A DNA stretch of 64,000 nt from Setoptus koraiensis. Taxonomy: Eukaryota > Animalia > Arthropoda. Location: the NCBI GenBank assembly GCA_048013815.1, contig CM106585.1, forward strand, positions 10,540,001-10,604,000, given 5' to 3'. Position numbers and translations under genes: made by a program. Under the pieces are notes generated by a model. The model saw only the letters and a program-made list of their open reading frames with translations. It made no database searches and was not told the origin of the DNA. Below, one piece after another: positions 1 to 64,000 of the stretch; the stretch's first letter is position 1; the number at the start of each line of letters is the position of its first letter.

Positions 1-1357
1 GGCGAGTCGCTAGCGCCGGCAGGGTCGTCTCCATTTGCTGCACGTTATTCAACTCAATATAGAACTCAATTCGAGCGCTCGAATCCCCCTTCGAATTGGT
101 TGCATCGCTAATCGGCACTGAAAATACGCAAACAGCCAGCCGCGTATTATGGATATTGTGGGCACAGCGACGATGGGGCCCGTCGGACGGAACAACAAAT
201 TCAAAATCAATTTAGTTAATTATAGCGTGCGCGCGGGCCCCAGTGAGCGACTCGCCAGTATCGGTCGCCTGTCTCAATCAGATAGTGCGTTGGTTGCGCG
301 TCTTGCTGGCTGCGTCGCGCCGACTATTAATAAAATTGTGCGACAAGTAAATTGGCAATGGTAATATTATCTTTATTATAAACAGGCGAGCCCGTTTTAA
401 TTTGCGTCTGCTCGATGCCGAGGCTGTCTAACAAACACACCGGGCGCCCCAACGCGATCGCTGGGCGCATACTCGGACGGTGGGCGCGTACGCGCGCGGT
501 GGGCCGACCGACGGGCCGTGGCGCTGTTAGGCGAGCGAGCGCCATTTGCACTGAGCCGCTTGGACTCGAAAGATTAGGGGCCCGCTTGTTGGGGCGCAAT
601 TAGGCGCGCCAATAATCAGCTCTAAAACGCAGCTTCGAGGGCGCTGTCGGAGGCACTGCAAACAGCGATTTGCAGGCCGGGAGGCGGGGGGGGGGTACGG
701 TTAGCCGGTCGCGCGGCTTTGCGACAACAGACTGTGTCGCCAACAGAGACAATGGAGCGTCTTATTGTCCATGTCTAATCTCACCACTGCCACTGCCACT
801 AATCTATTCAAGCGGCTCGGCGGGCGCCCATTGTTTGTTGAGCGCCCGCCGCTCTGCTGAGCGGGGCGCTGAAAATTTATCCGCTGGCCTTTTTGAATGA
901 TGACAAACAAGCATTGTGTGTGTCACCAATTTAGTTGGCTGCCCGAGCTGCTCAGTCAAAGGTTGACTGCTCGCCGGGTCCCGTCATCGGGGCCGCTTGT
1001 TTGACGGCTGCAAACAGCGACCCCTGTCAACCGGGCCCGGCTAATAGCGATCAATAGCTGAAAAGCGAACGTTGGGGCGACGGGCGACGGGGGGATAATC
1101 TCTAGCGGCAGCTCTATTTAAATGCGATATCCGCGTTTAAAGTGCGCACATCCGCACAACGAGCGCTTGTGCTCGTTCGCGATAAACTGTCCCCCACCGG
1201 CCCGTTTGTTTGTGCTCCGTTTTGCACTGCGGGCGCTTGTTACGTAGCGCACCAAATGTTACGTTGATGCTGTCGCCGGCCGCCTCATTAGGTCTGCGCG
1301 GCTCGGCGCGGCGGGCTCCCGCGACCGACGGCCCGCGACTCGGAGCAGCCGCTCGCT

Positions 1358-1426
1358 CCATGCTACGTAGCGCAGCATCCCGATGTTACGTAACGCTGCA
1401 TCGCGATGTTACGTAACGCAGTATCG
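1358..1426. repeat. 23-bp tandem repeat x3 with palindromic core
   Basis: Units start at 1358, 1381 and 1404. Cores are GCTACGTAGC, GTTACGTAAC and GTTACGTAAC. Confidence 0.85.
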
Positions 1427-2852
1427 CCATGTCAGTTGACAAACTGACATTCGGTGCGCCAGCCGAGCGCCCAGTGTATGCATATAATGAGTAGTCATAG
1501 CTGATTGAAAAACGATAATAACCAGCCAATATCGCAATATGCCCGCCACGTCACATGACGCTCGCCCATGTTGACTGTTGGCCTTTGATTAAAAAGCGGC
1601 GCCCCCATCGGGCCCGTCGGCTGACTGGCGCCGCCGCCCGCCGCTCGCCGCCTATCGCCCTGGCGGCCAATGGCGCCTCCTTATGGGGCTTATGGCGGCA
1701 GTATGTCGACAGTTTGCATAGTGCTAGTGCGCATACCGGCCCGCAATGGTGAATGGTGGCCAGCCACGGGTACTGATAGCGGCGATATTACGCAACAAGC
1801 GACCATTCTACTGGCCCGGCCACAAACAGGCGCCGAGCCAGTCGACGGGCTGCTCGTCACTTATCGTCGGCTTATCGATCTTGTCGGCCGCTGTCGCGTT
1901 TGCCGCCCGCCGACGGTCAGCCGACTCGTGCCCGAGTTGGCCCGCTCGCTGACGCCCGCCTGACGAACAAGCGCTGAACGGGCACCGAACGCCCGAGCCC
2001 GTCGAGCCGCGTCGCCCTCAATCCGGCCTCGTTTGGCGCCAAATGTCGACGGGCCGGCGCTCCGATCGCTTAGGTGATAATTCTCGCCCGCTTTACGTTT
2101 ATCGGAGTGCGAGTTCGCCGGAGTGCGGCCTCGCGACTCACAACTTGTGAGGCCGCCGTGCCAAGCGGCGGCCAAGACGAGAGCTGGCTTCTCGAGCAAC
2201 TCAAGCGTACGAGCGACGCCCTTCGAGCCGCTATTTTTATTTTATTGATGCCACATAATGTCACACACACAAACACATATTGTCGGCCTTGTAATTGAAA
2301 TTGCTCGCTGCCGGCAAGCTCCAATTGGCAGCTGACGGCGAACGCAGTTTAACGGGAGGGGGGGGGCCACTTACATAATGGCAGTTGTTACAGTTGAGCG
2401 ACAAGACGATGGATTGGCGCCAATGGGGCCGCATCCAGCGCGACTCGCCCGACGGCCTGGATATTTGTCATTTATGCGCCCTTGTACATGCATAATTTGT
2501 GTTCGGTTGACGCGCCCGTCCCCATACGACAAGCCGGCGACAAATGACAAATGGCGCGCCCCTGTGTCGGCCGGTTGCGGTCGCCCGCTTCGCATGCCGT
2601 CAGCCCGACAGCATCGGGCCGCTCGGTATCGGCGGCGCGGCGCCGCCGAAAGGCTCGCAACAATCGCAGCACTCGCAGCACTCGCAACATGGCAGCGTGC
2701 GGAAGTTGCCAGTTGGAACCGTCGGGAGCGGCGCCCGGGTCGCCGGCACCGGCGCACGGGAGGGCGCCCGTGCAATCGAGAATCGAGCCGAGATCAATCA
2801 CCGGAGTGGCACAAATAAAATTATTTGTGACGTGACGCTGATTTGATTCCGC

Positions 2853-2905
2853 CGCTGGCCACACAATCGCTGGCCACACAAACGCTGGCCAGACAATCGC
2901 TGGCC
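2853..2905. repeat. 15-bp tandem repeat x3.5
   Basis: Unit CGCTGGCCA(C/G)ACAA(T/A) read directly from the sequence. Confidence 0.9.
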
Positions 2906-3313
2906 GGATCGATTGCAACTGGCGCCGGTGGCTGGCATCGTCTGAAATAAACACGCTGATGAGTGATTGTTATGTAATGCCGGCCCGCCGCTGCTCGGTC
3001 GCTGCTCGGTGGCTGGTCAGTGGCTGGTCAGTTGCGTCCGTCTGGCGACGGCATATCGCCAACCATCGGGGCAAATCTGGCGGCCGACCAAACACAAATA
3101 TACCAGCAAACATACCGACAAATATACCGTGCGGACCGTGCACCATACAGTGTGCACGATTGGCGATACCGTCAGGCATTTTGTTGCAAAATTGGCGCAG
3201 TTGCGTGACCACGATATTGATTTGCAAACGGATCGATGTATCGCGCTGTCCGATGTGTCGATTGTTGGCCGTCGGCTAAAATTATTATTCACACTGTGAA
3301 TGGCGCACTGGCC

Positions 3314-3388
3314 AGCGGACAGTGGAAAGCGGACAGTGAAAAGCGGACAGTGAAAAGCGGACAGTGAAAAGCGGACAGTGAAAAGCGG
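3314..3388. repeat. 14-bp minisatellite x5.4
   Basis: Unit AGCGGACAGTG(A/G)AA. Confidence 0.95.
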
Positions 3389-3926
3389 TTTTTGCTCTGC
3401 CACTGGCCCGTCGCGTTGCAAACAGTTTGACAGGTGATACCAAACCACGGTGCCGGTATTACGGCCGGCAGCTATAAATACGCCGAGCCGAGCTAGACAA
3501 GCAGCAACAACCGGCCGACAGGTGGCCCTCGTGCCGTGCGAATGGCAGCCGCCACTGCAACTGGAACGCAAATCAAACGGGGCCCAAATTCGAGCGCGAA
3601 TCAAACGGGCCCCAAATTCGAACGCCCTTCCATCTACGTGATTAATCTAATCTGGCGCGCGCACACAGCAGCAGACTGACAGATCTGGCCGTGATGTATT
3701 ATCCGCGATTTAAAGTGACACTTTAAACAGGCAGCTTAAAGCGCTGAGGCCCGAGCCTTGCGCTTTGGGCGACTGGCCGGCCGCCCGAAGCTGCAGCTCA
3801 GCGCACAGAGGCAGCAAATAAACGCGCCGCAAGCAAACAGTGAAAGCGATCTCTGCTTTATCCGGGCCACAAAGCCCGAATGAAGCGAGGGGCCCCGAAT
3901 GAAGCGAGGGGCCAAATTGTGCTCAC

Positions 3927-4829
3927 CTGATAGTGTCCCAAATTGTCCACCGTGCATATGAGTCGGACGTCTCTGCCGGCCACCGCGCTCACATTGCCGA
4001 TGGGCTGGCCGAACGTGGGCGCCTGCTGGAGGCGAGCGCGCCTCTTGCTGCGCCCCGCCGAATCGCTGTGTCCATTATTATTATGTAACGGCGTCGTTGT
4101 CGTCGTTGTCGCTTTTGCTGTTGTTGTTGTCGGTGTCGCTTTCGTTGTTGGTGTCGTTGTTGTTGCTGGTGCGCGATAATGCGCGGATAATTCACGGCTC
4201 GCAGTGGCTCGGTTATTGACTTCTAATCTTGTAATGTTGTCGCTCGTCGTTGTTGGCCCGCTCACCCGATGTCGCTCACCGTCGACATAATCGGATCCCA
4301 TCAATTGGCTGCTGCCATTTTCGTCTCCGTCATTTTCGCTCACATGATGTTTTGTCGACGCTGATTGTTTGCCAATTTTGTCGCTACCGAGATCATTGGT
4401 CGGCGACAGGGCGACGGTCGCGGCCGCGGCAGCTCGGAGCAACGGCCTGCTCTCGCTTGCGTCAATGTTGCCCTGACGCGGCCCGCTTGTCGCAGTCGAT
4501 GCGCCACCGAGCTCGAGATGGCGCTCCAAATGCTCATGTCGAGCCTGAGGTGAATAATTTGTCAGCGGGGCCGATGATTTGTGGTGGCTTTGGCGTGCGC
4601 TTGTGTCAATTAAACTGACTTGTGATTCAACTGGTTCAAGCGTTGAGCGGTCGCGGGCGACTCCGTCAACTGACTGGCGCGGCCGTTGCGACCAACGTTG
4701 CGGTTGCGGCTCGACGGGCCCGGTCGAGCCAAGCGATTGGCGGCCGCTCGTGCGGTTGATTGGACTATTAGTGGCGATGCAATAATTAATAATTATGATG
4801 AATGGAAGCAAGCGATCGAGCGCGGCCAT
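3927..4829 (-). CDS. First coding exon of an Ig-superfamily cell-adhesion protein (Lachesin/DIP/IgLON-like); partial
   Basis: ATG at 4829 is followed by a hydrophobic signal-like segment (LLPFIIIINYCIA) and a long S/T-rich region. Then comes PTFGQPIGNVSAVAGRDVRLICTVDNLGHYQ, typical of the start of a Lachesin/DIP Ig1 domain. It ends at a phase-0 donor CAG|GTGAGC (intron starts at 3926). Downstream exons were not located. Confidence 0.65.
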
Positions 4830-6146
4830 TGCGAGGGCTTCACTGTTCACACTGAGATGTCATCAATCCGAATGGGGCCATCGACACCGCGCTGCTAAGT
4901 GGCGCTGCTGACGCTGATGCAAATGAAACGAAATGCCACTCGGCTCGAATCGCAATCGCTGGTTGAACGCTGAAGGGAGCGAGGTCTGTGCGCAAACTAA
5001 TTGATTGACTATTAGTTATTATTGGTTGTCAGTTGTGATTGGTTGTCGGTTGTTGTCAGTTGTCGGTTGTTGTCAGTTGTGGGTCGTTGCTAGTTGTCAG
5101 TTATGAGTTGTTGAGTCGATGGGTCATTGGCTGTTGTTGTTGGCCGTCGTTTGGCTGAAATGTCATGCAAATGGCCAGTGACTCGCGCGTGATTTGCGAC
5201 AAGTGCCAGCGTCTAACTGTCCATTGGCTCACTGTTGGCTGGCCGCTTTTTGTTGCTCTGTTGCCGGTCGCTTTTTTGACTGGTTGCACTAGCCTGGCGG
5301 AACCGAAATGAGCCTCTGCAAGGGCGATAATACTTTCAGTGTTTGGGTTGAGGCCCACTGGATATAAACACAAACATCGATGAATATATACGCACAGCAC
5401 AGACGAAACTGCGCACAACCGCACGTTCAAACCGGCCCCTCAGTTCGTTGCGACTCGCACCACAACAAGACACATTATAGAGACGAGGAGCCTCAGTGGG
5501 CCGGCGGGCCCCACTGCGCACGCCTAGCCTCACTGTGTCACACACACACACTGGGTTTGGACACACTGGAGCAAACTGAGCCAACGCGCTGCATTCAATG
5601 GCCAGATTGCGCAGCCAGATTCAATAGCTGGTGTGATAGTGATGCCTCGGTGCAAGGCACCCGGGCAAACCCGGCCAATTGCACCGGCCACCAGCGGCCA
5701 TCGGAAGCGAAACGAGGAGCACGATCTATTGACAACAAAATAATATTTTGAAAATATTGCCCGATTGCCATTTGAATCGCTGCGTTGCTGGCCGCCCAGC
5801 TGATTGCAACTGTTTGATAAAAATTGATGAAAGCTTGATGAAATTGATATGACAAGTTACATAATAGGCATCTCAACTGTGTCATGACTAATTAATGCAG
5901 TGTAAGCCTCAGTCGACCTGCGACCGGCGTCCGACCGGCGACTGGCGACGATTTCATACGACTTCGCAGCGAATCATTTGCAACTACAACTACGCGTCTA
6001 TTTGTTTTTACCTGTTTATACTCTATTGTCCATTGAGGCGTCTCGCGTTGTCAGCGAATGTTGCGGCCGAAGTTTGGTTTTGCTCGTGCTCGCATCGCCT
6101 GCGGATGCGCTTCCGCTTGCTCGGACGCTCATTTTCTAAAAATTCA

Positions 6147-21946: not shown

Positions 21947-22398
21947 ATTCTCTTATAATCTTAAAAAAACAAATTAACAAAAGGGTGCCCGCAGACGCAG
22001 TTACCTCTGTCAGCGAGCCATGGACCGTACTCTCTGTGCGGTTCGCGGCCCCGGTGCTAGATCACGCAAGGTGTCACAGATTCTCGGAATCCACCCATCA
22101 TAAAATGCATAGCGCAAGAGGCAAAAGCGTACCTTTTTTAATTAAAAAGAAACTCGTGCAGTTTTGTAAATCTCACGATGGGAGTTGTACACCGACTCAA
22201 CGGATCTACTCTGTTCAGTTGACCGTGACTAACGCTAATGCACTGCATAGAAATTAACAAGTTTGTAAGTTTTGTAAGTTACAATCTGCCGCATAATTGT
22301 AGAATCAAATATCGTAAAATACTGTTTAATGGGGAAAGCAACAATTGCTAGATACAGATATAAAACATGGGCGAATAGGATCTGTGATTTCGACCAGA

Positions 22399-22734
22399 TC
22401 ACGTTGACGATTGCGAATAATTCTTAGTGCTCAGTATCCTGCTGCCACACATACTGCAAATGCCCTTCTTGTAGGCGCAAGCCTGACAGTAATAGCATCC
22501 AGCTTGGTGGGTCTTGGATTTGCATATTCTACAATCCCTGTACTGCTGATAGGGGCTGGCGGCAGCCGATCTAGACGATGACGACGAAGATCCAGATTGG
22601 TAGGCACGCCGAGTAAGCAGCTTGTTCTCGTTTAGCTTCCTTCCACCGCTATCTGTAACATTCCTTGCTCCAGCCTTCCATGAGTCGGGCGTCACTATCT
22701 TGGTCAGTTTTTTCTCGCATTTCTCGCAAACCAT
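22399..22734 (-). CDS. CRIPT: Cysteine-rich PDZ-binding protein
   Basis: MVCEKCEKKL, DSWKAGARN, GGRKLNENKLL, and CRICK...YCQACAYKKGICSMCG. Confidence 0.97.
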   Translation of the reverse strand: MVCEKCEKKLTKIVTPDSWKAGARNVTDSGGRKLNENKLLTRRAYQSGSSSSSSRSAAASPYQQYRDCRICKSKTHQAGCYYCQACAYKKGICSMCGSRILSTKNYSQSST

Positions 22735-23144
22735 CCTGTGAGAGCTTTGCTGGTTGTCAATTGGTAGTCAATCGGTAGTCTGCTGGCAACGAGAAAAGTA
22801 TTTTTTTTTTCTCAAATATCAATCTAATATTGTTTGGTTTGCAATCAACAATGGCAACTGATTGCGGATCCATCTGCTGTCCGAATCATTGTGGTGAATA
22901 CAATATAATATGTTGTTATATTTGCATGCTAAATAGATTGGTGAACAAATCTACTCGAGTGATAAGTAGCTCTAATATTTTTATTCCGATGATGAGATCT
23001 ATCCGATAACAGCCTGGCGGTCATCTGCTGCTATATATCATCGATTGAATGTAAACATTCTGCTGATTTTGGCGCGTGTATTCAAATCAAAAAACTTTTT
23101 CGAAAAACTTGTCCGAAAAACGACGAAGAAAATTCTTACGCCAT

Positions 23145-26100
23145 CTAGGCTGACTTGATGAGTCTCACCAGTGAGTAGCTACAATCGTTCCATTTGTTTG
23201 CGTTGAATCTTATCTTGTTGCCAGATGAAACAAGCAAACGCCTTTGCAACTCTATCAGACAAAGTATCCTGTCTGAACCGGACATAGGCCTGACATACAC
23301 AATGTAGGCCGCTTGAAGCAAGGTGTCGCCCAGTGAGGAGTTGAGTACTTCGGTCAAGTCGTCCAACTCTTTCGTCCATGTATCTATTTGTGTGAGTAAA
23401 TTCTGTTTTAATTTGTCTACATTGGTCAATTGTGTTTGACAGTCATTGACGTTTTTCGCTAAATTAGACTGATACCTAATCTTCTTCTGCAGTATATTGT
23501 GAACGCGTTGCAGTTTCTGATTGACCTTATCGATTTTGTGACGTCTGTTATTCAGGTCCGCCAACAACTCAGAGAGTTTCTTCTCTGATTCAACATATAG
23601 CTTATAATTAGGTTTGACCACATTAATCACTCTGTCGAAGATGTCCACAGCATGTAGCCATTTGGCCAGCAGTTGACATTCGACCGACACACTGCCCAAT
23701 GATTGCAGATTAAGCTGATCCGATTGGAGATATTTCTCTCTTATGAGTTGCATCACTTCCGGTGGAATAGATTTTTTATCTAGACGCTTGAGATCATCTA
23801 GAAAGTTTACACCGTTGGCTTGTATCATTTTCAAACTGGGAGTCCAATAATCAAGGCATATCTTGCCCGTCAATGAGTCGAATTTTCGTATTGGCTGCAA
23901 CACGCCAGCATGTTGATTTTGTTCATGCACTTTCCTTTGATGTCCAAGGCTAGTTTGTATAAAACAAGTCGATCTTAATATGCACACGGCCTCTATAACC
24001 ATTTTGACAGCTTCAGGCGGTTGCGGTTTCATACAGCGAATTGTTTTCAGCGATGATTCGTCCAAGTTGCTAAGAGCTCTGGCGGCTGCCCGAATGGCCG
24101 GTATGGCCCGATGAGTCAATTGGCTTATGCAATCGTCTCGTATCTTTGCCATAGCCTGTTGCTTGTTCAACGCTCTCGCCTCGTCCGCGGCCAGTATCTC
24201 CTGTTCCAATTCCAATCCAACGGTTTCCTGTTCCAGTTTTGCTATCAATTCTTCACTCTCACAACAAGAATCCAATAAGTCTCGCTCGTACATTTGACTG
24301 ATTTCATTGACGAGACCATCCACCTCAACCAGGTTTTCTTTGGCCGATTGAACGGCCTTGAGCAGACTCTCTTTTCTCTTTGCCAATTTCGATCTGTTTT
24401 TGCTCCACAGCGACTTGAATCTACACACAAACTCTATGAACAGCGGGGGCGTAATTAATTTGTAGCTTGTCAGGCAGTGACCAGCTTCCCTATAGCCTCT
24501 AGAGTTCCTAGGGCGACCGGACGATAGTTGCGGTTGAGGCGGATATTGCAACTGCAAATATTGTCGCACGGTGACGTGCATTTCTAACAATGCTCGCGCT
24601 ATCAATTTTTTCCATTCATCTCTGGCGGTATCATCAGTTTCGTCGGGAAAATACTCTATGCTCTCGGCAAACTTCTCTGCCACAATTTCCAGCGCATCGC
24701 TAGGCCATTCTTCCAGCCAATCGCCAATTTTCATGTGCTCCAAGAAAACATCTAGTGCATGTTCGCGATTTGCCATTGTTTGCAATCGTTTCAATTCCGT
24801 CATATATTGCTCTAATCCCAATTCTAAAAATTGAGCCAAAGTTGTGACGGTTGTTGGCGATATCTCTTTGTTGATTATCGCACTCAATTCCTGCCAATGT
24901 CTATCTTTCAATCTATTCTCTGTGAGAATTTTCAAGATAGGCGCACATTTCATGATGAAATCCTCCAGTCTTGTTCGCAAAGTATTAACATTATACGGTA
25001 GATTTTCCGTTATAGCCTCATAGATCAGCATGGTCTCACTACAAACAATTTCCGGTGTCCGTATTGGTGCCCGGATATATTTAGTTTCTAGGAGATTGAT
25101 CTGTTTGGTAAACTCATTCAGTTTATTCTCGACAGATCGGTACTGTATTCGTTTGATTTCGGAATGCATCCATTTGATTTGATTTCTGTCGAATTGATTG
25201 GCGAGCAACCAAAATATTCGCAGTGGCTCTACCCAATAGAGCCATTCTTTCAATATCTGTTCAACGTTCGTGCTGCTATCAATCGGCAATTCTAAATTGA
25301 GCAGTTGTTTCTCCTCTAACAATTGTTGGTATTGTTGCTCCAAAAACAGCAGTCGTTGCTTGAGTTTCTGAGCCACCTCAGAGTTTTCGTTGACATTTTC
25401 AAGAGGCGAGGCCAAACGTTTCTGATAGAAGTCACACATGACTCTATGGAGATCATCGACCAACTGAAACAAGGTGCTTGATTTAATTCCGATCTGTTCT
25501 GTTAGCTTTTGTTTCTTCACGGAATACAATTTCTTGGATTTTCTCACCAAGTGATTCAATCTATGAGGCCAACTATTCAATTGATGTATCAACTCAAAAT
25601 GTTCCTCGTGCATGTCTAGACTGGCCATTTCAATGAGAGACTGGTGCTCATTTATGGCCAATTCATAGACGCTAATCAATTTGGTCATTTTTCCGGTCTC
25701 AATCTCCTTCAAATTGTTTATTTTCTCTATGAGCAAACTGACAGCGGATCTTTTCTCGTGTGTCTGGTCCAAGCTGCCAGATAATGTTATGTTGGAGGCT
25801 ATATCTTCGAATTGTGTCAGGCAACTTTTCAGCGAATTGTTGACCTCTTCAAACTTTGTTCTTGTCATCTCTTGTTGTCGCTTGCATATTAACTGTTGTA
25901 ATTGTTGTTGCAGAGCGCTACAATCGATGGTGACCATGCCACAATCGTAGTGGACATCCAATCTATTGAGTTCCATTTGAATCAACTTCAGACGCCGCAA
26001 TTCGTTGGATAGGTTGTATTGATTCGAATGGTCAGCTGCCGAATCACAACTATCCATTGATTGGGCAGAATCTTGGCCCGAATCAGTGGATGGCTGCAAT

Positions 26101-27719
26101 TGTAGTGTCGATCGCTTCAGGATAGTGACAAATTTCGATATATAGATTGATAGCGCTTGCGAGAGATGCGAATCTTTCGCTGTTATCATTTTGGCGATTC
26201 TTCTCTTGCTGTCAACAACGAAAGGGTCGTCTTTATCAACCGACTCTAGATAATTACCAGACGATGCGCAAGGGTATCTGTGCTCCAATTGATCCATCCA
26301 TATTGATGCAGTAAGCGAAATCAATTCCGTTTCGATACGTGGCAGTAGTAGCTGGGTTTCCACAAGCTCATCCACTGAGAACAATATCAATTCTACCAAA
26401 TCCTCCTCTCCAGGCTCGTAATTAAGGACTGCCTGAGATTCTCTGGATACACTAGTAGATGCCCACCAGTCGTTGATTGATTCCAATGACAGTTTCATAT
26501 TGATAGACAAAATGGGAGGCTTCCGTTTTTTCATAGTCTCTGCCACATGATCGCACCAAGCTTGTATGCAATTGACGAGAAATTGTCGCAGTAGCAAAGA
26601 CATGATACACGTTATTCTATCGAGCAGTATTGTTTCTGGCACTAGTTTCAATAGCATCTCTCTATCTGATTTGTATTTATCATCGTAGATTGTTTGCAGC
26701 ACCAGAGCGGGCCACTCATAACGAATCACAGAGCGAATTTGTTGACACTGACAACATATTGCCAATTTATATTTTGAGGGCGACAATTGTTGAAGTTCGT
26801 TTGTGGATAGCGTCAACGCTTGGAAACATTTAGCTGAGTTGCTAATTATTGCGTGAAATATGGGACTTGTTTTCAGCAGTAATAAATCCTTTGATTGATC
26901 ACGAACTTGTAACAGTTTCTCGTGCCACGGCACGGGTGCTACAATTGTTGTACTGACGTAGCTGTCCAATCTGAGCTTCTCGCCGCCCAACCCGTTGAGT
27001 GTCTTTTGTAGTAAAGCTATATCCCATGCCATGCAATCTAGCATTGCATCTTGACAATTTTCATTGGCCTCACACAACACCTGGTCGATAATTGTCAGCG
27101 ATTTAGGCTGATTTCTTGCGATCAAATTGATGAATCTTTTGCAATTCGTCTTGATGAACTCTGCTCTAACAAGCTTGAATTTGTCCGGAGTGATAACGAG
27201 GTGTTTGTTCGAAGCGCCAAGAGAATGCAATACTTTTTTGATGTTGGACACGAACGAAATATCGTCTTTTATATTTTCATTGGGCAAACTTTTTCGCTGT
27301 TGTTCATCCGGATATTTTGGCCGACAACAGCAACACGACAACCGGTGCCGTTGTTCCTTTGTCTCATTGGTCGGATCTACTATGACGGGTAAAAGGCAGC
27401 TTGTTTGTTTAATGCGATATGAATTATCATATCTACTAGGCCAAGCTACATTGTCCGTTAGACATTTAAGGTATTCGAGTGGCCGAGACGAACTGTAGCA
27501 CAGGCCAACTAAATTATGTGCAATGATGCTGTTGGATTGGTGACCCAGTAGGTCATTTGGGTATCCGAAATTGACACATTGATACTTATTTTCATCGATG
27601 GTATTGGACAGTTTCAGCGATGGCACGTCCATCGACAGGAGAATTGCATTGCTCGTCGGACAGGCACAAGCGTTATGCTGAGTGTCGTTAGCACGGATAT
27701 TGCGCTCCATTTGTTCCAT
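23145..27719 (-). CDS. Axonemal (DNAH3/7/12-type) dynein heavy chain derivative: tail + stalk + microtubule-binding domain, no AAA ring
   Basis: Uninterrupted ORF. Tail motifs are PVPWH and LKDRHWQELS...REHALD. Post-AAA4 WPSDALEIVAEKF and ITPPLFIEF follow, then stalk CC1, the MTBD (PPEAVKMVIEAVCIL...DYW...FLDDLKRLDKKSIPP...LAKWLHAVD) and CC2 ending GDTLLQAAYIVY. No GxxxxGK[ST] motif was seen. Confidence 0.85.
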   Translation of the reverse strand: MEQMERNIRANDTQHNACACPTSNAILLSMDVPSLKLSNTIDENKYQCVNFGYPNDLLGHQSNSIIAHNLVGLCYSSSRPLEYLKCLTDNVAWPSRYDNSYRIKQTSCLLPVIVDPTNETKEQRHRLSCCCCRPKYPDEQQRKSLPNENIKDDISFVSNIKKVLHSLGASNKHLVITPDKFKLVRAEFIKTNCKRFINLIARNQPKSLTIIDQVLCEANENCQDAMLDCMAWDIALLQKTLNGLGGEKLRLDSYVSTTIVAPVPWHEKLLQVRDQSKDLLLLKTSPIFHAIISNSAKCFQALTLSTNELQQLSPSKYKLAICCQCQQIRSVIRYEWPALVLQTIYDDKYKSDREMLLKLVPETILLDRITCIMSLLLRQFLVNCIQAWCDHVAETMKKRKPPILSINMKLSLESINDWWASTSVSRESQAVLNYEPGEEDLVELILFSVDELVETQLLLPRIETELISLTASIWMDQLEHRYPCASSGNYLESVDKDDPFVVDSKRRIAKMITAKDSHLSQALSIYISKFVTILKRSTLQLQPSTDSGQDSAQSMDSCDSAADHSNQYNLSNELRRLKLIQMELNRLDVHYDCGMVTIDCSALQQQLQQLICKRQQEMTRTKFEEVNNSLKSCLTQFEDIASNITLSGSLDQTHEKRSAVSLLIEKINNLKEIETGKMTKLISVYELAINEHQSLIEMASLDMHEEHFELIHQLNSWPHRLNHLVRKSKKLYSVKKQKLTEQIGIKSSTLFQLVDDLHRVMCDFYQKRLASPLENVNENSEVAQKLKQRLLFLEQQYQQLLEEKQLLNLELPIDSSTNVEQILKEWLYWVEPLRIFWLLANQFDRNQIKWMHSEIKRIQYRSVENKLNEFTKQINLLETKYIRAPIRTPEIVCSETMLIYEAITENLPYNVNTLRTRLEDFIMKCAPILKILTENRLKDRHWQELSAIINKEISPTTVTTLAQFLELGLEQYMTELKRLQTMANREHALDVFLEHMKIGDWLEEWPSDALEIVAEKFAESIEYFPDETDDTARDEWKKLIARALLEMHVTVRQYLQLQYPPQPQLSSGRPRNSRGYREAGHCLTSYKLITPPLFIEFVCRFKSLWSKNRSKLAKRKESLLKAVQSAKENLVEVDGLVNEISQMYERDLLDSCCESEELIAKLEQETVGLELEQEILAADEARALNKQQAMAKIRDDCISQLTHRAIPAIRAAARALSNLDESSLKTIRCMKPQPPEAVKMVIEAVCILRSTCFIQTSLGHQRKVHEQNQHAGVLQPIRKFDSLTGKICLDYWTPSLKMIQANGVNFLDDLKRLDKKSIPPEVMQLIREKYLQSDQLNLQSLGSVSVECQLLAKWLHAVDIFDRVINVVKPNYKLYVESEKKLSELLADLNNRRHKIDKVNQKLQRVHNILQKKIRYQSNLAKNVNDCQTQLTNVDKLKQNLLTQIDTWTKELDDLTEVLNSSLGDTLLQAAYIVYVRPMSGSDRILCLIELQRRLLVSSGNKIRFNANKWNDCSYSLVRLIKSA

Positions 27720-29101
27720 GGGTGCGCCCAAGAATAGTTAGTGTCCTCATGTATTAATTTGAATTCTGAGTATTATCAATCGTGCTTGTAAATCCAATTC
27801 AGTGTGGTGATCGCGTGGATATTTTTGGGTGCTTAGATGAGCAGTTTATTCTCCTTGCCCGCCCTCGCATACCACACGCTGGTCGAAAGTAAGCATTGTT
27901 AGATGGTTGCAATGTTTTACATTCTCCATGACCTTTTTCGTTCATTCTTCGAAGCGATTCCAAATACCCACACCTCCACAATTATTGCACGTGCCATAAG
28001 TCAAGCTAAATGAAAAAATAGTCGCACAATCAGTGTTCGTTGAGGCCACAGAGATCAATCGCCCGAAGAAGCTGACCCGTGTGTGCAGTTCACGCGGATT
28101 GCGGATATTGTGAGAACTAACAACGGAAATGACCCAGTTAGGCATCGGTGGTGCGAGTCTGAAGCCAGTAACGTGAAAAAAGATTTGTGCAAAAGTCGAT
28201 CAAATTGCTATTATTCAAAAATATCGACACAAGTGCCGCAGTGAATACAAGTAACAGCAAGTCACATGCTCTAGTGTTCACCCATATTGCGGTGTTCATG
28301 CATGAATATCATCAACTGGCACCAAGAAGAATTCTCTGGATCCTTGTCGCTGAATGTCCGTTCGTTGCCGTTGAGTCACTCGTTGGAACTTGGCTCCGAG
28401 TTACGAAGTCGGTCATCATAACATCGACATGACAGTTCGACAATTCGGCAATTCGGTAAATCGGCAATTCGGCAATTTGGCAATTCTACAATTCGACAAA
28501 TTCGATGCCTACTTGAATTGGCCGCCGCAACTCACTCTGAGACTGTTGGCTCAACAAAAACTCGGCGTGACTACTGTAGCGTGATTCATCAAGTGTGGCG
28601 TCGGTCACAAGGTGAACCGAGTGAATTGCCTGCATGAATAACAGGTGTACAAATGCATTTAACAAGTGCCACGATTATATAACTGAGGTGTGTGCAAATT
28701 TCCACCTGTCCGTTCGTCTGTCTGTTTGTGCAAGTGTATCTGTTGGCGCTGCTTGTGCGTTTGTCTGTTTGTTTGTTTGTTTCTCTGTGTGTGTGTTCTG
28801 TCAGATGGACGCTGGACAAAATAAGCCAATAATGCCACATTTTGCATTCACAAATCAAGTCGTCGTAAGACACACGTCAAAATAGAAACTAAATGTAAAA
28901 AACAGGACTATGATCGTTCAATTGATCTATTAATCGAATCCGACTGAACCAATTATAACAATTATCTAATTGTTGCCAGTTTCAACATTTGATTGGGCAT
29001 AACAAGCAAAATCACAGCAGATTAGTAAGCACCAATCTCAGCATCAATACTGTCTACTGGAATAGATCACACACCGGCCAAGCAACTGTTACTCGAGCGA
29101 A

Positions 29102-61657: not shown

Positions 61658-64000
61658 TCAAAATGACGACTCGATGTGTCCGCGGCCATCTCGCTTGCCG
61701 CCCGCAGACCTGTTATTTGTGGCTGCTGGGGGCATGCTCCTAACGGCCGCTTGCTGAAACAATTCCTCGGTGTCGTCCGCGTCGTTGTCTGACATTTTGT
61801 TCTTGTTAGAGGCCAGCGAGGCTTGCTTGGCGCTCTTTTTGGCCTCGTCGCCGTACAGATCCTTCAATCGTGGACTCAGGAAAATCATTATAAAGTCAAA
61901 AATAGATCCTATGGCTATCAATACAATGGACACCGTGTGATATGTGGTCCTCAATTTGTTTGTGTCATACAGCCAACAATTGCCCCGTTTGTCGCACGTT
62001 TTGCTCCAAACAACGCAACTGTCGTCGAATATTTTGCCATATATCAACGGATAGGGAATGGACACAAACAACGAATGCCAGAAGCTGGTCATGGCCACCG
62101 CCAGAGCCTTTTGTTCCTGAGTGACAGAGCGCAAAAAGGTGACTATGTTGCCTGCGGGTCGTTCATCGTGTTGTTTTGTGCGTGTCATTTGCATAATCGC
62201 ACAATTATAACGACAACAGTGTGTTAATTATAATGACAGAAGCGATAGATAATTAGTTGATTGAGTGGCTGCAAGTGTGAAAGCTGAGATTTCAAATGGT
62301 CATAACGAAGTCATTGTTGTCGTTGTTATTGCACCACCGCGAGTCGCTTACCTGGCCGGCCCGAGCCTGAGATCATGCCTCCGAGGGCTATTATTGTGGC
62401 ATACGTAATTAGGTTGTTTGTGTCGGGCGGACACTTGTCTGTGGTGCGGATATTTGGCGTTCGCTCGCCCAGGGCGCTGAACAGGCAAGAGCATTCGCCG
62501 AATGCCGTTATGTTTGTGATTGGGTTCACAAACGATTGCTTGCATCCCGCGTGACAGGGCGAAAAGAAGGCCGTTCCCTGGGTTGAGTCGCAAACGGGCT
62601 GATAGTTTTTCACGCCGCAATTACACTCGCGGTTGCAGTCGTTGGTCAGCTCGAGCCTGGGATAATCAATGGAAAGTTGCGGTGATCACCATAGATCATT
62701 CGCAGTATTTGAGATTTCGGAATAGTTGCAATGGATTAGTTTATATTGAATTGGAACGGGAATTTGTGTTGAAATTTGAGTTTGTGAATGCTAAGCCGCT
62801 AGACGGCGAACAGCGATTTATCACTCACATTCCGTTGTACACGTTGCTCGTGGTGCCCGGCATGTAGGGCGTGGGCCCCTTAATGGTGGACGCAAACAAG
62901 AGCGTAAACACCGAGGTGGCCTCAACGAGAAATATGCAAGTGGTGAGAACGCGCGGCCCCGGCTTCAGCAAAGTGATCAACAGGCCGCCCAGTTGAACGC
63001 CTATTATCTTGGACAGTATGCCCGTGGTGCCGCTTATGAGGCTCGCCTTCGAGGCCGACTGCCTGAACTGGGCCTCGTAGTATTTGGTCTGAAAGACAAA
63101 GTGTCCTATTATTCCTATGCCCCTGAACAGACTTCCGGCTAGCGCGCACGCCACTATGGGATTGGTGGCTATTTGATACATTTCGCCAGGTAATTCTTTC
63201 AGGCTGAGCTCGGTTTTTTTCTGTGGCTGTTTCTTTTTGCTTTTTTTTTGTAGGTCGGCCTCGCCATCGGCCAATGGGGCGTGCTTGTTACTGCGACCCA
63301 TTAGGGTGTCGTGGGCACTGGAGGCGGGCACTGTGCCCGTTACCGTGTCCAACTGTTTCAAATGGGGCATCTGGTTGTCGTCCAGGGCGTCGTTCGAGTC
63401 CTCGTTGGCCTCATCCAGGCCGCTGGGCTTCTTCTTGAATTCGCGCGGAAACAACGACAACGGAAAGGCCAACATCAGCAGCGCCATGCCCGATATCAGA
63501 AAGCCTATCCACCAGGCCCCAATCCAGCGCGGGTCCTTCTCTGTGATGCCCTCGGGCACCACCAATGGATTTTCGTAATATTTCATACTGATCGAGGTCA
63601 AATAAAAGCCCAGCGGTGCGCCAAATATTCGCATAGAGAATATAAAGCCAAAAAAGGCCGGCATCTTGCTGCGACTGACATTGTCGTCTAAATACGGCGT
63701 GCCATAGGTGAAATAGAGGCTCGTACCGAAGCCCCGAAAGAAGTTGCTGGCGCCAAATATGAGCACGGCCACCATGGTCATGGTTGAGGCCGATTGAAAG
63801 CTCTGACCGCTACAGTTCTCCACTTCCGGCTTCAAGTGGCACAATTCGTCCACTGTGCGACTCTTTGACAGTGTTATGTTTTTTGCCCGCTCTAAATCGT
63901 CCATTTGAGCTGGCCCATAAATAAAATAAGGCAACGCTGTCAGCATAACACTCAATCCTGTCACTATGCAACCAATGGCCATCCATCTGGGCCTATGCGC
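61658..64000 (-). CDS. Organic anion transporting polypeptide (OATP/SLCO), 5'-partial; exons >64000-62829, 62656-62352, 62151-61658
   Basis: GTPYLDDNV, DPRWIGAWWIGF, Kazal-like CNRECNCGVKNYQPVC...FFSPCHAGC, and PYPLIYGKIFDDSCVVWSKTCDKRGNCWLYD. The ORF runs off the window edge. Confidence 0.95.

What the first reader, a model, noticed from the sequence alone, without database searches (positions are those of the whole stretch)
23145..27719. Motorless axonemal dynein: tail fused in frame to stalk and microtubule-binding domain, all six AAA modules gone
Seen: one stop-free ORF of ~1,520 aa. The late-tail sequence (...ANREHALDVFLEHMK) runs directly, at about 24728, into IGDWLEEWPSDALEIVAEKF. Established: in single-headed inner-arm dyneins these two segments are separated by the linker and AAA1-AAA4, over 1,000 aa. 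After the junction come CC1, a recognisable MTBD and CC2. The ORF stops (NDCSYSLVRLIKSA*) just before AAA5 would begin, and only ~410 bp remain before CRIPT, so no AAA5/6 exons fit. No Walker A motif is visible. Inference: both losses spare the stalk, and the long ORF is undisrupted, which suggests a retained ATP-independent microtubule tether or cross-linker rather than a decaying pseudogene. If the host is a mite (aflagellate sperm), this would be an axonemal motor repurposed after loss of motile cilia.
Basis: partly seen in the sequence, partly recalled or inferred. Interest (0 to 1): 0.85.

Follow-up and report, generated by a model that had tools for sequence, protein, structure and literature searches.

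The report
Ring-less dynein heavy chain in mites
An acariform (probably eriophyoid) mite keeps, under strong purifying selection, a gene derived from an inner-arm axonemal dynein that retains only the tail, a linker stub and the microtubule-binding stalk; the same ATPase-ring deletion is shared by at least 24 relatives, so a motor appears to have become a non-motor protein.

Summary
Window 23145-27719 (minus strand) is one 1,524-codon ORF. It reads: inner-arm-dynein tail, first ~150 positions of the linker, a direct join to the end of the AAA4 lid, then CC1, the microtubule-binding domain (MTBD) and CC2, then a stop. About 1,570 residues (rest of linker, AAA1-3, most of AAA4) are missing, as are AAA5, AAA6 and every Walker A motif.

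It is not an assembly error. Contigs from three samples in three studies cross the junction.

It is not a pseudogene. An orthologue at 75% identity has the same junction and the same end. Overall dN/dS is 0.14 (95% CI 0.12-0.17) and 0.06 in the MTBD, and all 22 indels are in frame.

The deletion is old. Twenty-four relatives share it, at identical canonical residues (898|2466) in the five members where BLAST could map both breakpoints. One clade still carries AAA5 and includes an NCBI protein of the mite Halotydeus destructor, auto-named "DNAH3". A second clade, which includes the window, has also lost AAA5.

The neighbouring gene places the host among acariform mites.

The proposed function, an ATP-independent microtubule tether, is inferred. 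Neither transcription nor microtubule binding was tested. I found no published description.

The parts
23145..27719 (-). Complete single-exon coding sequence of the ring-less dynein heavy-chain derivative (1,524 aa plus stop at 23145-23147)
   Evidence: ORF list and translation. Orthologue P0001/L001 is colinear end to end.
27150..27719 (-). N-terminal ~190 aa, predicted disordered and the fastest-evolving part
   Evidence: pLDDT below 50 for residues 1-190 of model mac6c4f9c6f7f. dN/dS is 0.32 for aa 1-250.
25671..27149 (-). Inner-arm-dynein-type tail (helical bundles), aa ~191-683
   Evidence: The family tail profile A2 hits the tails of DNAH3, DNAH12 and DNAH7 at E 3e-21 to 5e-11. Foldseek matches the tail model to single-headed inner-arm dynein tails at about E 1e-10. 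dN/dS for aa 1-683 is 0.21.
24726..25670 (-). Neck plus first third of the linker, aa 684-998 (Pfam DHC_N2 positions 8-153 at aa 830-997)
   Evidence: dN/dS 0.12.
24717..24728 (-). Deletion junction ...FLEHMK|IGDW|LEEWPSDAL... The flanking canonical sequences both carry 'DW', so the exact break is ambiguous by 1-2 residues
   Evidence: alignments (DNAH3 '...RMKLDWV' at 1016 and 'IDWFQSWPTDAL' at 2589). Same break at canonical 898|2466 in five mapped members. Junction alignment. Contigs of three samples cross it.
24450..24725 (-). Remnant of the AAA4 small (lid) domain that forms the stalk base, aa 999-1090
   Evidence: Aligns to DNAH3 2589-2650. The long-form relatives score Pfam AAA_8 positions 186/188-259 of 259 here.
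24069..24449 (-). Stalk coiled-coil helix CC1, aa 1091-1217
   Evidence: A 127-residue helix in model m57f7cb96d3ce. Foldseek matches dynein stalks at E 1e-13.
23685..24068 (-). Microtubule-binding domain with beta-hairpin flap, aa 1218-1345. It includes a clade-specific variable insert at aa ~1253-1275 (23895-23963)
   Evidence: Canonical signature residues P1207, PP1234-5, W1292, W1354 and P1370 are kept. dN/dS 0.06. Insert seen in all short forms and absent from long forms.
23292..23684 (-). Stalk coiled-coil helix CC2, aa 1346-1476
   Evidence: A 131-residue helix. Pfam MT hit.
23148..23291 (-). Short C-terminal extension (48 aa) where AAA5 would begin, followed by the stop
   Evidence: Alignment to DNAH3 ends at about residue 3020. 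Conserved in P0001. Long forms continue into AAA_9 here.
22980..22985 (-). Candidate poly(A) signal AATAAA, 160 nt after the stop
   Evidence: Read directly from the sequence. Not tested.

Best explanation
SHOWN. This is an intact protein-coding gene under purifying selection. It descends from a single-headed inner-arm axonemal dynein heavy chain of the DNAH3/7/12 type. One ancient in-frame deletion removed about 1,570 residues: two thirds of the linker, AAA1-AAA3 and most of AAA4. A later truncation in the window's clade removed AAA5, and AAA6 is absent in all members seen. What remains is the inner-arm-dynein tail, a linker stub, the AAA4-lid stalk base, CC1, the MTBD and CC2. There is no nucleotide-binding site.

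INFERRED. The protein cannot be a motor. It most likely acts as an ATP-independent microtubule-binding tether. The MTBD at the tip of a rigid antiparallel coiled coil (CC1 and CC2 are each about 130 residues long) would bind a microtubule. The tail would dock to whatever inner-arm dynein tails bind, such as a neighbouring doublet or microtubule and light chains.

The most plausible site is the immotile sensory cilia, or another microtubule array, of an animal whose group has aflagellate sperm. This would parallel nematode DHC-3 in OLQ mechanosensory cilia.

The confidence given is for the whole statement. For the SHOWN part alone I would put it at about 0.95.
For: - Architecture.
- Real DNA: single 5,690-nt contigs in X1 and X2, a 963-nt contig in X4 and a 515-nt contig in X6 cross 24728 with no joints, from three samples in three studies.
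- Selection against the L001 orthologue (dS 0.7-0.9): omega 0.143 (CI 0.117-0.171) overall, 0.21 in the tail, 0.12 in the linker stub, 0.08 in the stalk part and 0.06 in the MTBD. All 22 indel runs are in frame.
- Shared deletion: all 24 relatives give one HSP across the junction. The five mapped to canonical P0031 break at 898|2466.
- Two well-supported clades: long forms with AAA5, short forms without.
- Fold: the stalk/MTBD model has pLDDT 79 and matches Chlamydomonas single-headed inner-arm dynein chains at E 1e-13. The tail matches inner-arm dynein tails.
- The MTBD core is the most conserved part of the family and keeps the canonical Pro/Trp signature.
- The short-clade MTBD core is more basic (mean net charge +10.7) than canonical dyneins (+3.9).
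- Host is an acariform mite.
- Aflagellate sperm is listed among putative shared characters of Acari (PMC6534568). Motility machinery was lost while cilia were kept in Ixodes and in nematodes (PMC10425847). C. elegans DHC-3 is expressed with a p28-like light chain in OLQ ciliated neurons (PMC3112216).
Against: - No transcript or protein evidence was obtained. The runs that hold the locus cover the intergenic DNA at even depth and look like DNA.
- Microtubule binding is untested.
- The window protein keeps only 57% of the 77 columns conserved in canonical stalks and MTBDs. It has lost some conserved lysines (K1296, K1366, K1371 equivalents) and carries a ~23-aa insert next to the flap.
- Its own MTBD charge (+5) lies within the canonical range.
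- Without a ring the coiled-coil registry, which sets affinity in real dyneins, is unknown.
- The rest of the genome could not be searched, so the presence or absence of other dyneins, p28, centrin or other axonemal proteins is unknown.
- The tissue of expression is pure inference.
Confidence: 0.6

Rival explanations
1. Neofunctionalised scaffold. The gene is real and selected, but the stalk acts only as a rigid spacer. The diverged MTBD now binds something other than microtubules, or the protein's main job lies in its tail.
For: - About 43% of canonical-conserved stalk/MTBD columns are changed in the window protein, and about 49% across the short clade.
- A variable insert of 5-100 aa sits beside the flap in every short form.
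- Several conserved lysines are lost.
- The tail is also under purifying selection, omega 0.21.
Against: - The MTBD is the most constrained region (omega 0.06).
- It keeps the fold-defining Pro/Trp residues and the flap hairpin.
- The short-clade MTBD became more basic, not less. That is the direction expected for binding the acidic tubulin surface.
Confidence: 0.2
2. Split dynein. The ATPase ring is encoded elsewhere and assembles in trans, as in the two-gene cytoplasmic dynein of Ustilago (from my own knowledge), so the complex is still a motor.
For: The rest of the genome could not be searched. The long forms keep AAA5, which in a ring would contact its neighbours.
Against: - The linker stub is fused covalently to the AAA4 lid, leaving no topological place for AAA1-4.
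- Residues at the stalk base conserved in canonical dyneins have degenerated in the short clade.
- No other dynein-like sequence occurs in the 64-kb window or in loci L001-L004.
- The short forms lack AAA5 and AAA6 as well.
Confidence: 0.03
3. Decaying pseudogene whose frame happens to be still open.
For: It has lost everything that makes a dynein a motor, and no expression data exist here.
Against: - The 1,524-codon frame is open in two species separated by dS of about 0.7-0.9.
- Omega is 0.14 with an upper confidence limit of 0.17, and 22 of 22 indels are in frame.
- Intact ORFs exist in 24 further relatives down to about 25% identity.
Confidence: 0.02
4. Assembly collapse or chimeric contig that created the junction.
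For: None found.
Against: - Contigs from three samples in three studies span the junction without joints or loose ends.
- The same junction occurs in independent assemblies of other species, including an NCBI genome.
Confidence: 0.01

Closest known systems
Single-headed inner-arm axonemal dynein heavy chains (human DNAH3, DNAH12, DNAH7; Chlamydomonas minor inner-arm dyneins in 8glv)
   Same: These are the best sequence and fold matches for the tail, the linker start, the AAA4 lid, the stalk and a flap-bearing MTBD. The protein is clearly the evolutionary descendant of this group.
   Different: It lacks about 1,570 internal residues (linker remainder, AAA1-3, most of AAA4) and everything after CC2. 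It has no P-loop.
'Dynein axonemal heavy chain 3' of Halotydeus destructor (P0288, 1,532 aa, automatic NCBI name) and its unnamed metagenomic relatives P0021, P0023, P0024, P0282-P0287
   Same: Same family and same deletion junction: DHC_N2 up to about position 157 is joined to AAA_8 at about position 186.
   Different: These 'long forms' still carry the AAA5 large domain (Pfam AAA_9), have no insert in the MTBD and keep 78% of canonical stalk columns. They form a separate clade with 99/98 support.
DNAHX and DNHD1, the described non-motile dynein heavy chains (PMC11785096)
   Same: They are dynein heavy chains that have given up motility yet are retained.
   Different: They keep the full six-module ring with a degenerate AAA1 site. 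In DNAHX the stalk/MTBD insertions are reported to disrupt microtubule binding. Here the ring is gone and the MTBD is the best-conserved part.
C. elegans DHC-3 (B0365.7) (PMC3112216)
   Same: It is a non-canonical dynein heavy chain, co-expressed with a light chain similar to axonemal p28, kept in an animal that lost ciliary motility (PMC10425847). It is expressed in OLQ ciliated sensory neurons.
   Different: DHC-3 is a large gene (over 12 kb). A Caenorhabditis bovis relative seen here, P0143 (3,176 aa), has a full DHC_N2 and a stalk with about 1,000 aa of unrecognisable sequence between them. That looks like degeneration rather than deletion. I did not test orthology of P0143 to DHC-3.
Engineered stalk-MTBD fragments of dynein used in vitro (from my own knowledge, not tested here)
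   Same: An isolated coiled-coil stalk plus MTBD binds microtubules without ATP. That is what this natural protein would amount to at its C-terminal end.
   Different: Those are laboratory constructs with a fixed coiled-coil registry. This is a natural, full-tail protein conserved across a mite clade.

Membership tests
Dynein heavy chain (motor) family | Ring of six AAA+ modules | tested here: not met
   No AAA Pfam hit in the window protein. The alignment to DNAH3 skips residues 1016-2589 and ends at about 3020.
Dynein heavy chain (motor) family | Walker A / P-loop at AAA1 (and at AAA2-4) | tested here: not met
   No G-x4-GK[ST] in any of the 25 family members, against 2-4 in three canonical controls.
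Dynein heavy chain (motor) family | Complete linker (Pfam DHC_N2, 403 positions) | tested here: not met
   Only positions 8-153 are present. The same holds in relatives.
Dynein heavy chain (motor) family | Antiparallel coiled-coil stalk with a globular MTBD | tested here: met
   Pfam MT hit. The model shows 127- and 131-residue helices flanking a helical MTBD with a hairpin flap, and Foldseek gives E 1e-13 to dynein chains.
Single-headed inner-arm dynein lineage (DNAH3/7/12 type), by descent | Closest sequence relatives of both tail and stalk belong to this group | tested here: met
   Top phmmer hits are DNAH3, DNAH12 and DNAH7. The tail profile hits the same three. Named hits of the long form are DNAH3 and DNAH7.
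Non-motile ring-bearing dyneins (DNAHX / DNHD1) | Full motor domain retained with degenerate AAA1 | tested here: not met
   The motor domain is absent. Family description taken from PMC11785096.
Processed or decaying pseudogene | Frame disruptions and neutral substitution pattern (dN/dS about 1) | tested here: not met
   The frame is open, omega is 0.14 (CI 0.12-0.17), and all indels are in frame.
Microtubule-associated (non-motor) protein, functional class | Binds microtubules independently of nucleotide | not testable with these tools
   Supported only by inference from the conserved MTBD fold and the strong constraint on it.
Expressed gene | Transcript covering the ORF | tested here: inconclusive
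   The RNA-run search returned only runs of unknown kind. Their contigs cover intergenic DNA at even depth, which looks like DNA.

The most novel reading that the evidence does not exclude
Acariform mites converted an inner-arm axonemal dynein into a ring-less structural protein in two steps: first deletion of linker-AAA1-4, later loss of AAA5 in one clade. The product now serves as a static, ATP-independent cross-bridge between microtubules. The most likely place is between doublets of immotile mechanosensory cilia. This would be a new class of dynein-derived MAP and a natural minimal stalk-MTBD system.
Probability: 0.35. Interest if true: 0.85.

Novelty: new variant of a known kind. Interest (0 to 1): 0.77.

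Why it matters
Dyneins are defined by their AAA+ ring. The non-motile dynein heavy chains I found described, DNAHX and DNHD1, keep that ring. Here a whole clade of animals has kept a dynein heavy chain for a long time with the ring cleanly excised, while the tail and especially the microtubule-binding domain stay under strong constraint.

Three things follow.
- It shows what parts of an axonemal motor remain useful after a lineage gives up motile cilia.
- It supplies a natural experiment on stalk/MTBD behaviour without allosteric input from the ring.
- The two-step series (AAA5 kept, then lost) offers a readable path for how a motor becomes a structural protein.

It also flags an annotation trap, because the one public member is auto-named "Dynein axonemal heavy chain 3".

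Tried and rejected
- RNA evidence. The RNA-directed run search returned only runs of unknown kind. My single read-laying run showed contigs crossing intergenic DNA at even depth, so they look like DNA. Transcription is unresolved.
- Exact look-up of the window protein in the contig collection found nothing.
- Earlier-notes searches for 'dynein', 'microtubule' and 'cilia' found nothing. I could not learn whether other axonemal genes exist in this genome.
- The ESM Atlas returned only generic dynein-fragment clusters with scores of 0.73 or less.
- Searching papers for the SRA accessions of the relatives' contigs found nothing. Apart from Halotydeus, the species that carry the family are therefore unnamed.
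- CRIPT synteny is limited to the closest relative, so I did not treat the neighbourhood as functionally meaningful.
- I considered that the ~23-aa MTBD insert is an unspliced intron. I rejected this because it stays in frame in P0001 with length changes of whole codons, and every short-form member has an in-frame insert of different length at that spot.
- I considered a chance open frame and rejected it (about 1e-41).
- Literature searches for a motor-less dynein or for mite axonemal dyneins gave no description of this family.


Full report
**The object**

The ORF listing and translation show one stop-free frame on the minus strand from 27731 to 23145. The first in-frame ATG is at 27719, which gives a 1,524-aa product ending LVRLIKSA*. 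The region is about 42% G+C. Roughly 6% of random codons would be stops, so an open frame this long has a chance probability near 1e-41 (my arithmetic).

The surrounding genes are ordinary animal genes, mostly single long exons:
- MICAL, MsrB and an OSBP-related protein
- CRIPT, 410 bp downstream
- a RUN-FYVE protein and an aminotransferase
- PARP1, thiolase and others

**Architecture**

Pfam reports only DHC_N2 positions 8-153 of 403 (aa 830-997) and the dynein stalk family MT (aa 1285-1476). There is no AAA family hit.

phmmer against PDB sequences puts human DNAH3, DNAH12 and DNAH7 on top, all single-headed inner-arm dyneins. The alignment to DNAH3 has three parts:
- aa 705-1002 to DNAH3 748-1016
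- aa 999-1023 to DNAH3 2589-2613
- aa 1083-1487 to DNAH3 2643-3020

About 1,570 residues are therefore missing at codon 998/999 (window 24726-24728): the rest of the linker, AAA1-AAA3 and most of AAA4. The protein ends where AAA5 would start.

Both canonical flanks carry 'DW' ('RMKLDWV' and 'IDWFQSWPTDAL'), so the break is ambiguous by a residue or two. A short remnant of the AAA4 lid survives as the stalk base.

No Walker A motif occurs in this protein or in any relative, while canonical controls have 2-4. tblastn with a full-length canonical dynein finds no further dynein pieces anywhere in the 64-kb window.

**Not an assembly artefact**

The locus is held by runs from several samples and studies. 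Laid on 22350-28300, X1 and X2 each give one 5,690-nt contig across the whole gene. X4 gives a 963-nt contig over 24288-25250 and X6 a 515-nt contig over 24446-24960. There are no joints or loose ends at the junction.

These contigs also cover intergenic DNA at even depth, so they look like DNA. I obtained no RNA evidence.

**Selection**

A word-index protein search found P0001 (1,541 aa, 75% identity, 99% coverage) on a Logan contig, locus L001. It is colinear from start to stop, with the same junction (FLKHMK-SDWLEEWPADAL) and the same end (RLIKTA*). CRIPT is again the downstream neighbour.

Codon-wise results:

| Region | dN/dS |
|---|---|
| Whole protein | 0.143 (bootstrap 95% CI 0.117-0.171; dN 0.133, dS 0.93) |
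| Tail (aa 1-683) | 0.21 |
| Linker stub (aa 684-998) | 0.12 |
| AAA4 lid to C-terminus (aa 999-1524) | 0.08 |
| MTBD (aa 1201-1375) | 0.06 |

All 22 indel runs are whole codons. The YN00 method gives 0.20 overall. This pattern belongs to a working protein whose most constrained part is the microtubule-binding domain.

**A family, not a one-off**

An exhaustive HMMER search of 1.84 billion representatives returned a block of unnamed proteins of 1,465-2,749 aa. In each, a single alignment runs across the junction to near the C-terminus. A further search seeded with P0023 added P0282-P0288.

All 24 relatives give one BLAST HSP spanning window residues ~820-1480. Against a canonical 3,994-aa dynein (P0031), the window protein, P0001, P0021, P0023 and P0024 all break at the same canonical residues, 898|2466. 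The junction alignment is unmistakably homologous. One ancestral deletion is the simple reading.

Pfam splits the family into two groups.
- 'Long forms' are P0021, P0023, P0024 and P0282-P0288. They read DHC_N2(2-157) + AAA_8(186/188-259 only) + MT + AAA_9, so they keep the AAA5 large domain but nothing of AAA1-4 or AAA6.
- 'Short forms' are the window protein, P0001, P0012-P0020, P0022 and P0025-P0027. They stop 12-80 residues after CC2.

A maximum-likelihood tree of the AAA4-lid-to-CC2 segment separates the short clade (100/100), the long clade (99/98) and canonical dyneins (100/100). The window protein and P0001 form the first and slowest-evolving branch of the short clade.

The long-form gene sits between brahma and nanos both in the Halotydeus destructor genome and on a soil-metagenome scaffold. 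In both places there is no room for AAA6.

**Host**

The neighbouring OSBP gene has its best named matches in acariform mites: Dinothrombium 63%, Leptotrombidium 59%, Oppia 58%. About twenty closer relatives are unnamed.

The compact, nearly intron-free gene structure fits eriophyoid mites (PMC7738191). Other agents of this scan reached the same label for this genome. I treat that as a lead, tested only partly.

The only named family member is P0288, automatically annotated 'Dynein axonemal heavy chain 3 [Halotydeus destructor]'.

**Structure**

AlphaFold2 on aa 820-1524 with the family alignment gives mean pLDDT 79. The model runs as follows:
- a helical linker stub
- a low-confidence junction loop
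- lid helices
- a 127-residue CC1
- a helical MTBD with a beta-hairpin flap
- a 131-residue CC2
- two short terminal helices

Foldseek puts Chlamydomonas single-headed inner-arm dynein chains first (8glv_Kg and 8glv_Mm, E about 1e-13, ~505 aligned columns).

The tail model has an N-terminal ~190 residues predicted disordered and helical bundles after that. It matches tails of human and algal inner-arm dyneins at about E 1e-10. The tail profile also hits the DNAH3, DNAH12 and DNAH7 tails by sequence, at E 3e-21 to 5e-11.

**State of the MTBD**

Seventy-seven stalk/MTBD columns are at least 80% conserved in 27 full-length dyneins. Long forms keep 78% of them, short forms 51% and the window protein 57%.
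- The columns that survive everywhere are the fold signature: CC1 Pro1207, PP1234-5, W1292, W1354 and CC2 Pro1370.
- The columns lost in the short clade cluster at the stalk base, where a ring and buttress would touch. Some conserved lysines are also lost.

Every short form has an in-frame insert of 5-100 aa just before the flap.

Net charge of the MTBD core averages +3.9 in canonical dyneins, -1.7 in long forms and +10.7 in short forms. The window protein is +5.

This is compatible with retained, perhaps strengthened, binding to the acidic tubulin surface. It does not prove it.

**Interpretation**

Shown:
- The gene is real and selected.
- It has no ring and no P-loop.
- It is dynein-derived.
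- The deletion is ancient and shared.

Inferred: it is a non-motor microtubule binder that links its tail's partners to a microtubule.

Context from the literature:
- Aflagellate sperm is listed among the putative shared characters of Acari (PMC6534568).
- The motility machinery, but not cilia, was lost in Ixodes and in nematodes (PMC10425847).
- C. elegans keeps an odd heavy chain, DHC-3, expressed with a p28-like light chain in OLQ ciliated neurons (PMC3112216).

A role in immotile sensory cilia is therefore the most attractive site. No data here bear on tissue.

The described non-motile heavy chains DNAHX and DNHD1 keep the whole ring, and DNAHX has a disrupted MTBD (PMC11785096). That is the opposite solution. 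I found no paper describing a ring-less dynein heavy chain or this mite family.

**Verdict**

Its interpretation is supported and broadened to a family of at least 25 sequences with a two-step history. The main gaps are expression, microtubule binding, a genome-wide inventory of axonemal genes, and species names for most family members.

Noticed in passing
P0143 (Caenorhabditis bovis protein, 3,176 aa): A nematode dynein-like heavy chain scores only a full DHC_N2 (aa 628-1008) and the stalk (aa 2031-2341) in Pfam. About 1,000 aa between them and about 830 aa after them have no recognisable AAA family. This may be a parallel case in which the ring degenerated rather than being deleted, in another lineage without motile cilia. 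Orthology to C. elegans dhc-3 was not checked.
   Followed up: partly
L005 10001-14657 (Halotydeus destructor, GCA_022750525.1) and L002 10001-15529: The long-form gene lies between a brahma-type SNF2 ATPase and nanos in both loci, with HSP70 nearby. This synteny is conserved across distant mites. In the window's clade the gene has moved or the neighbourhood has been rearranged, since CRIPT and OSBP flank it instead.
   Followed up: partly
window 1-6000 and 62000-64000: G+C rises to 0.51-0.59 at both ends of the window, against about 0.40 inside. The three ORFs of 160-330 aa at 2472-4850 (minus strand) have no Pfam match.
   Followed up: no
window 22781-22830: An A-run between CRIPT and the dynein-derived gene is length-polymorphic (one extra base in some contigs). 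It breaks the Logan assemblies of X1 and X2 at the same place.
   Followed up: no
window 22399-22734 (minus strand): CRIPT, itself named a microtubule-associated protein in Pfam, is the immediate downstream neighbour on the same strand. The pairing is kept only in the closest relative L001 and not in L006 or L007, so it is probably coincidence.
   Followed up: yes
runs X1/X4 (organism A) and X2/X5 (organism B): Runs filed under two different organism labels hold this DNA (0.86-1.00 of the sampled words). This would fit a tiny mite being sequenced together with, or as a contaminant of, another organism such as a host plant.
   Followed up: no
Pfam confirms both identities.
   Followed up: partly
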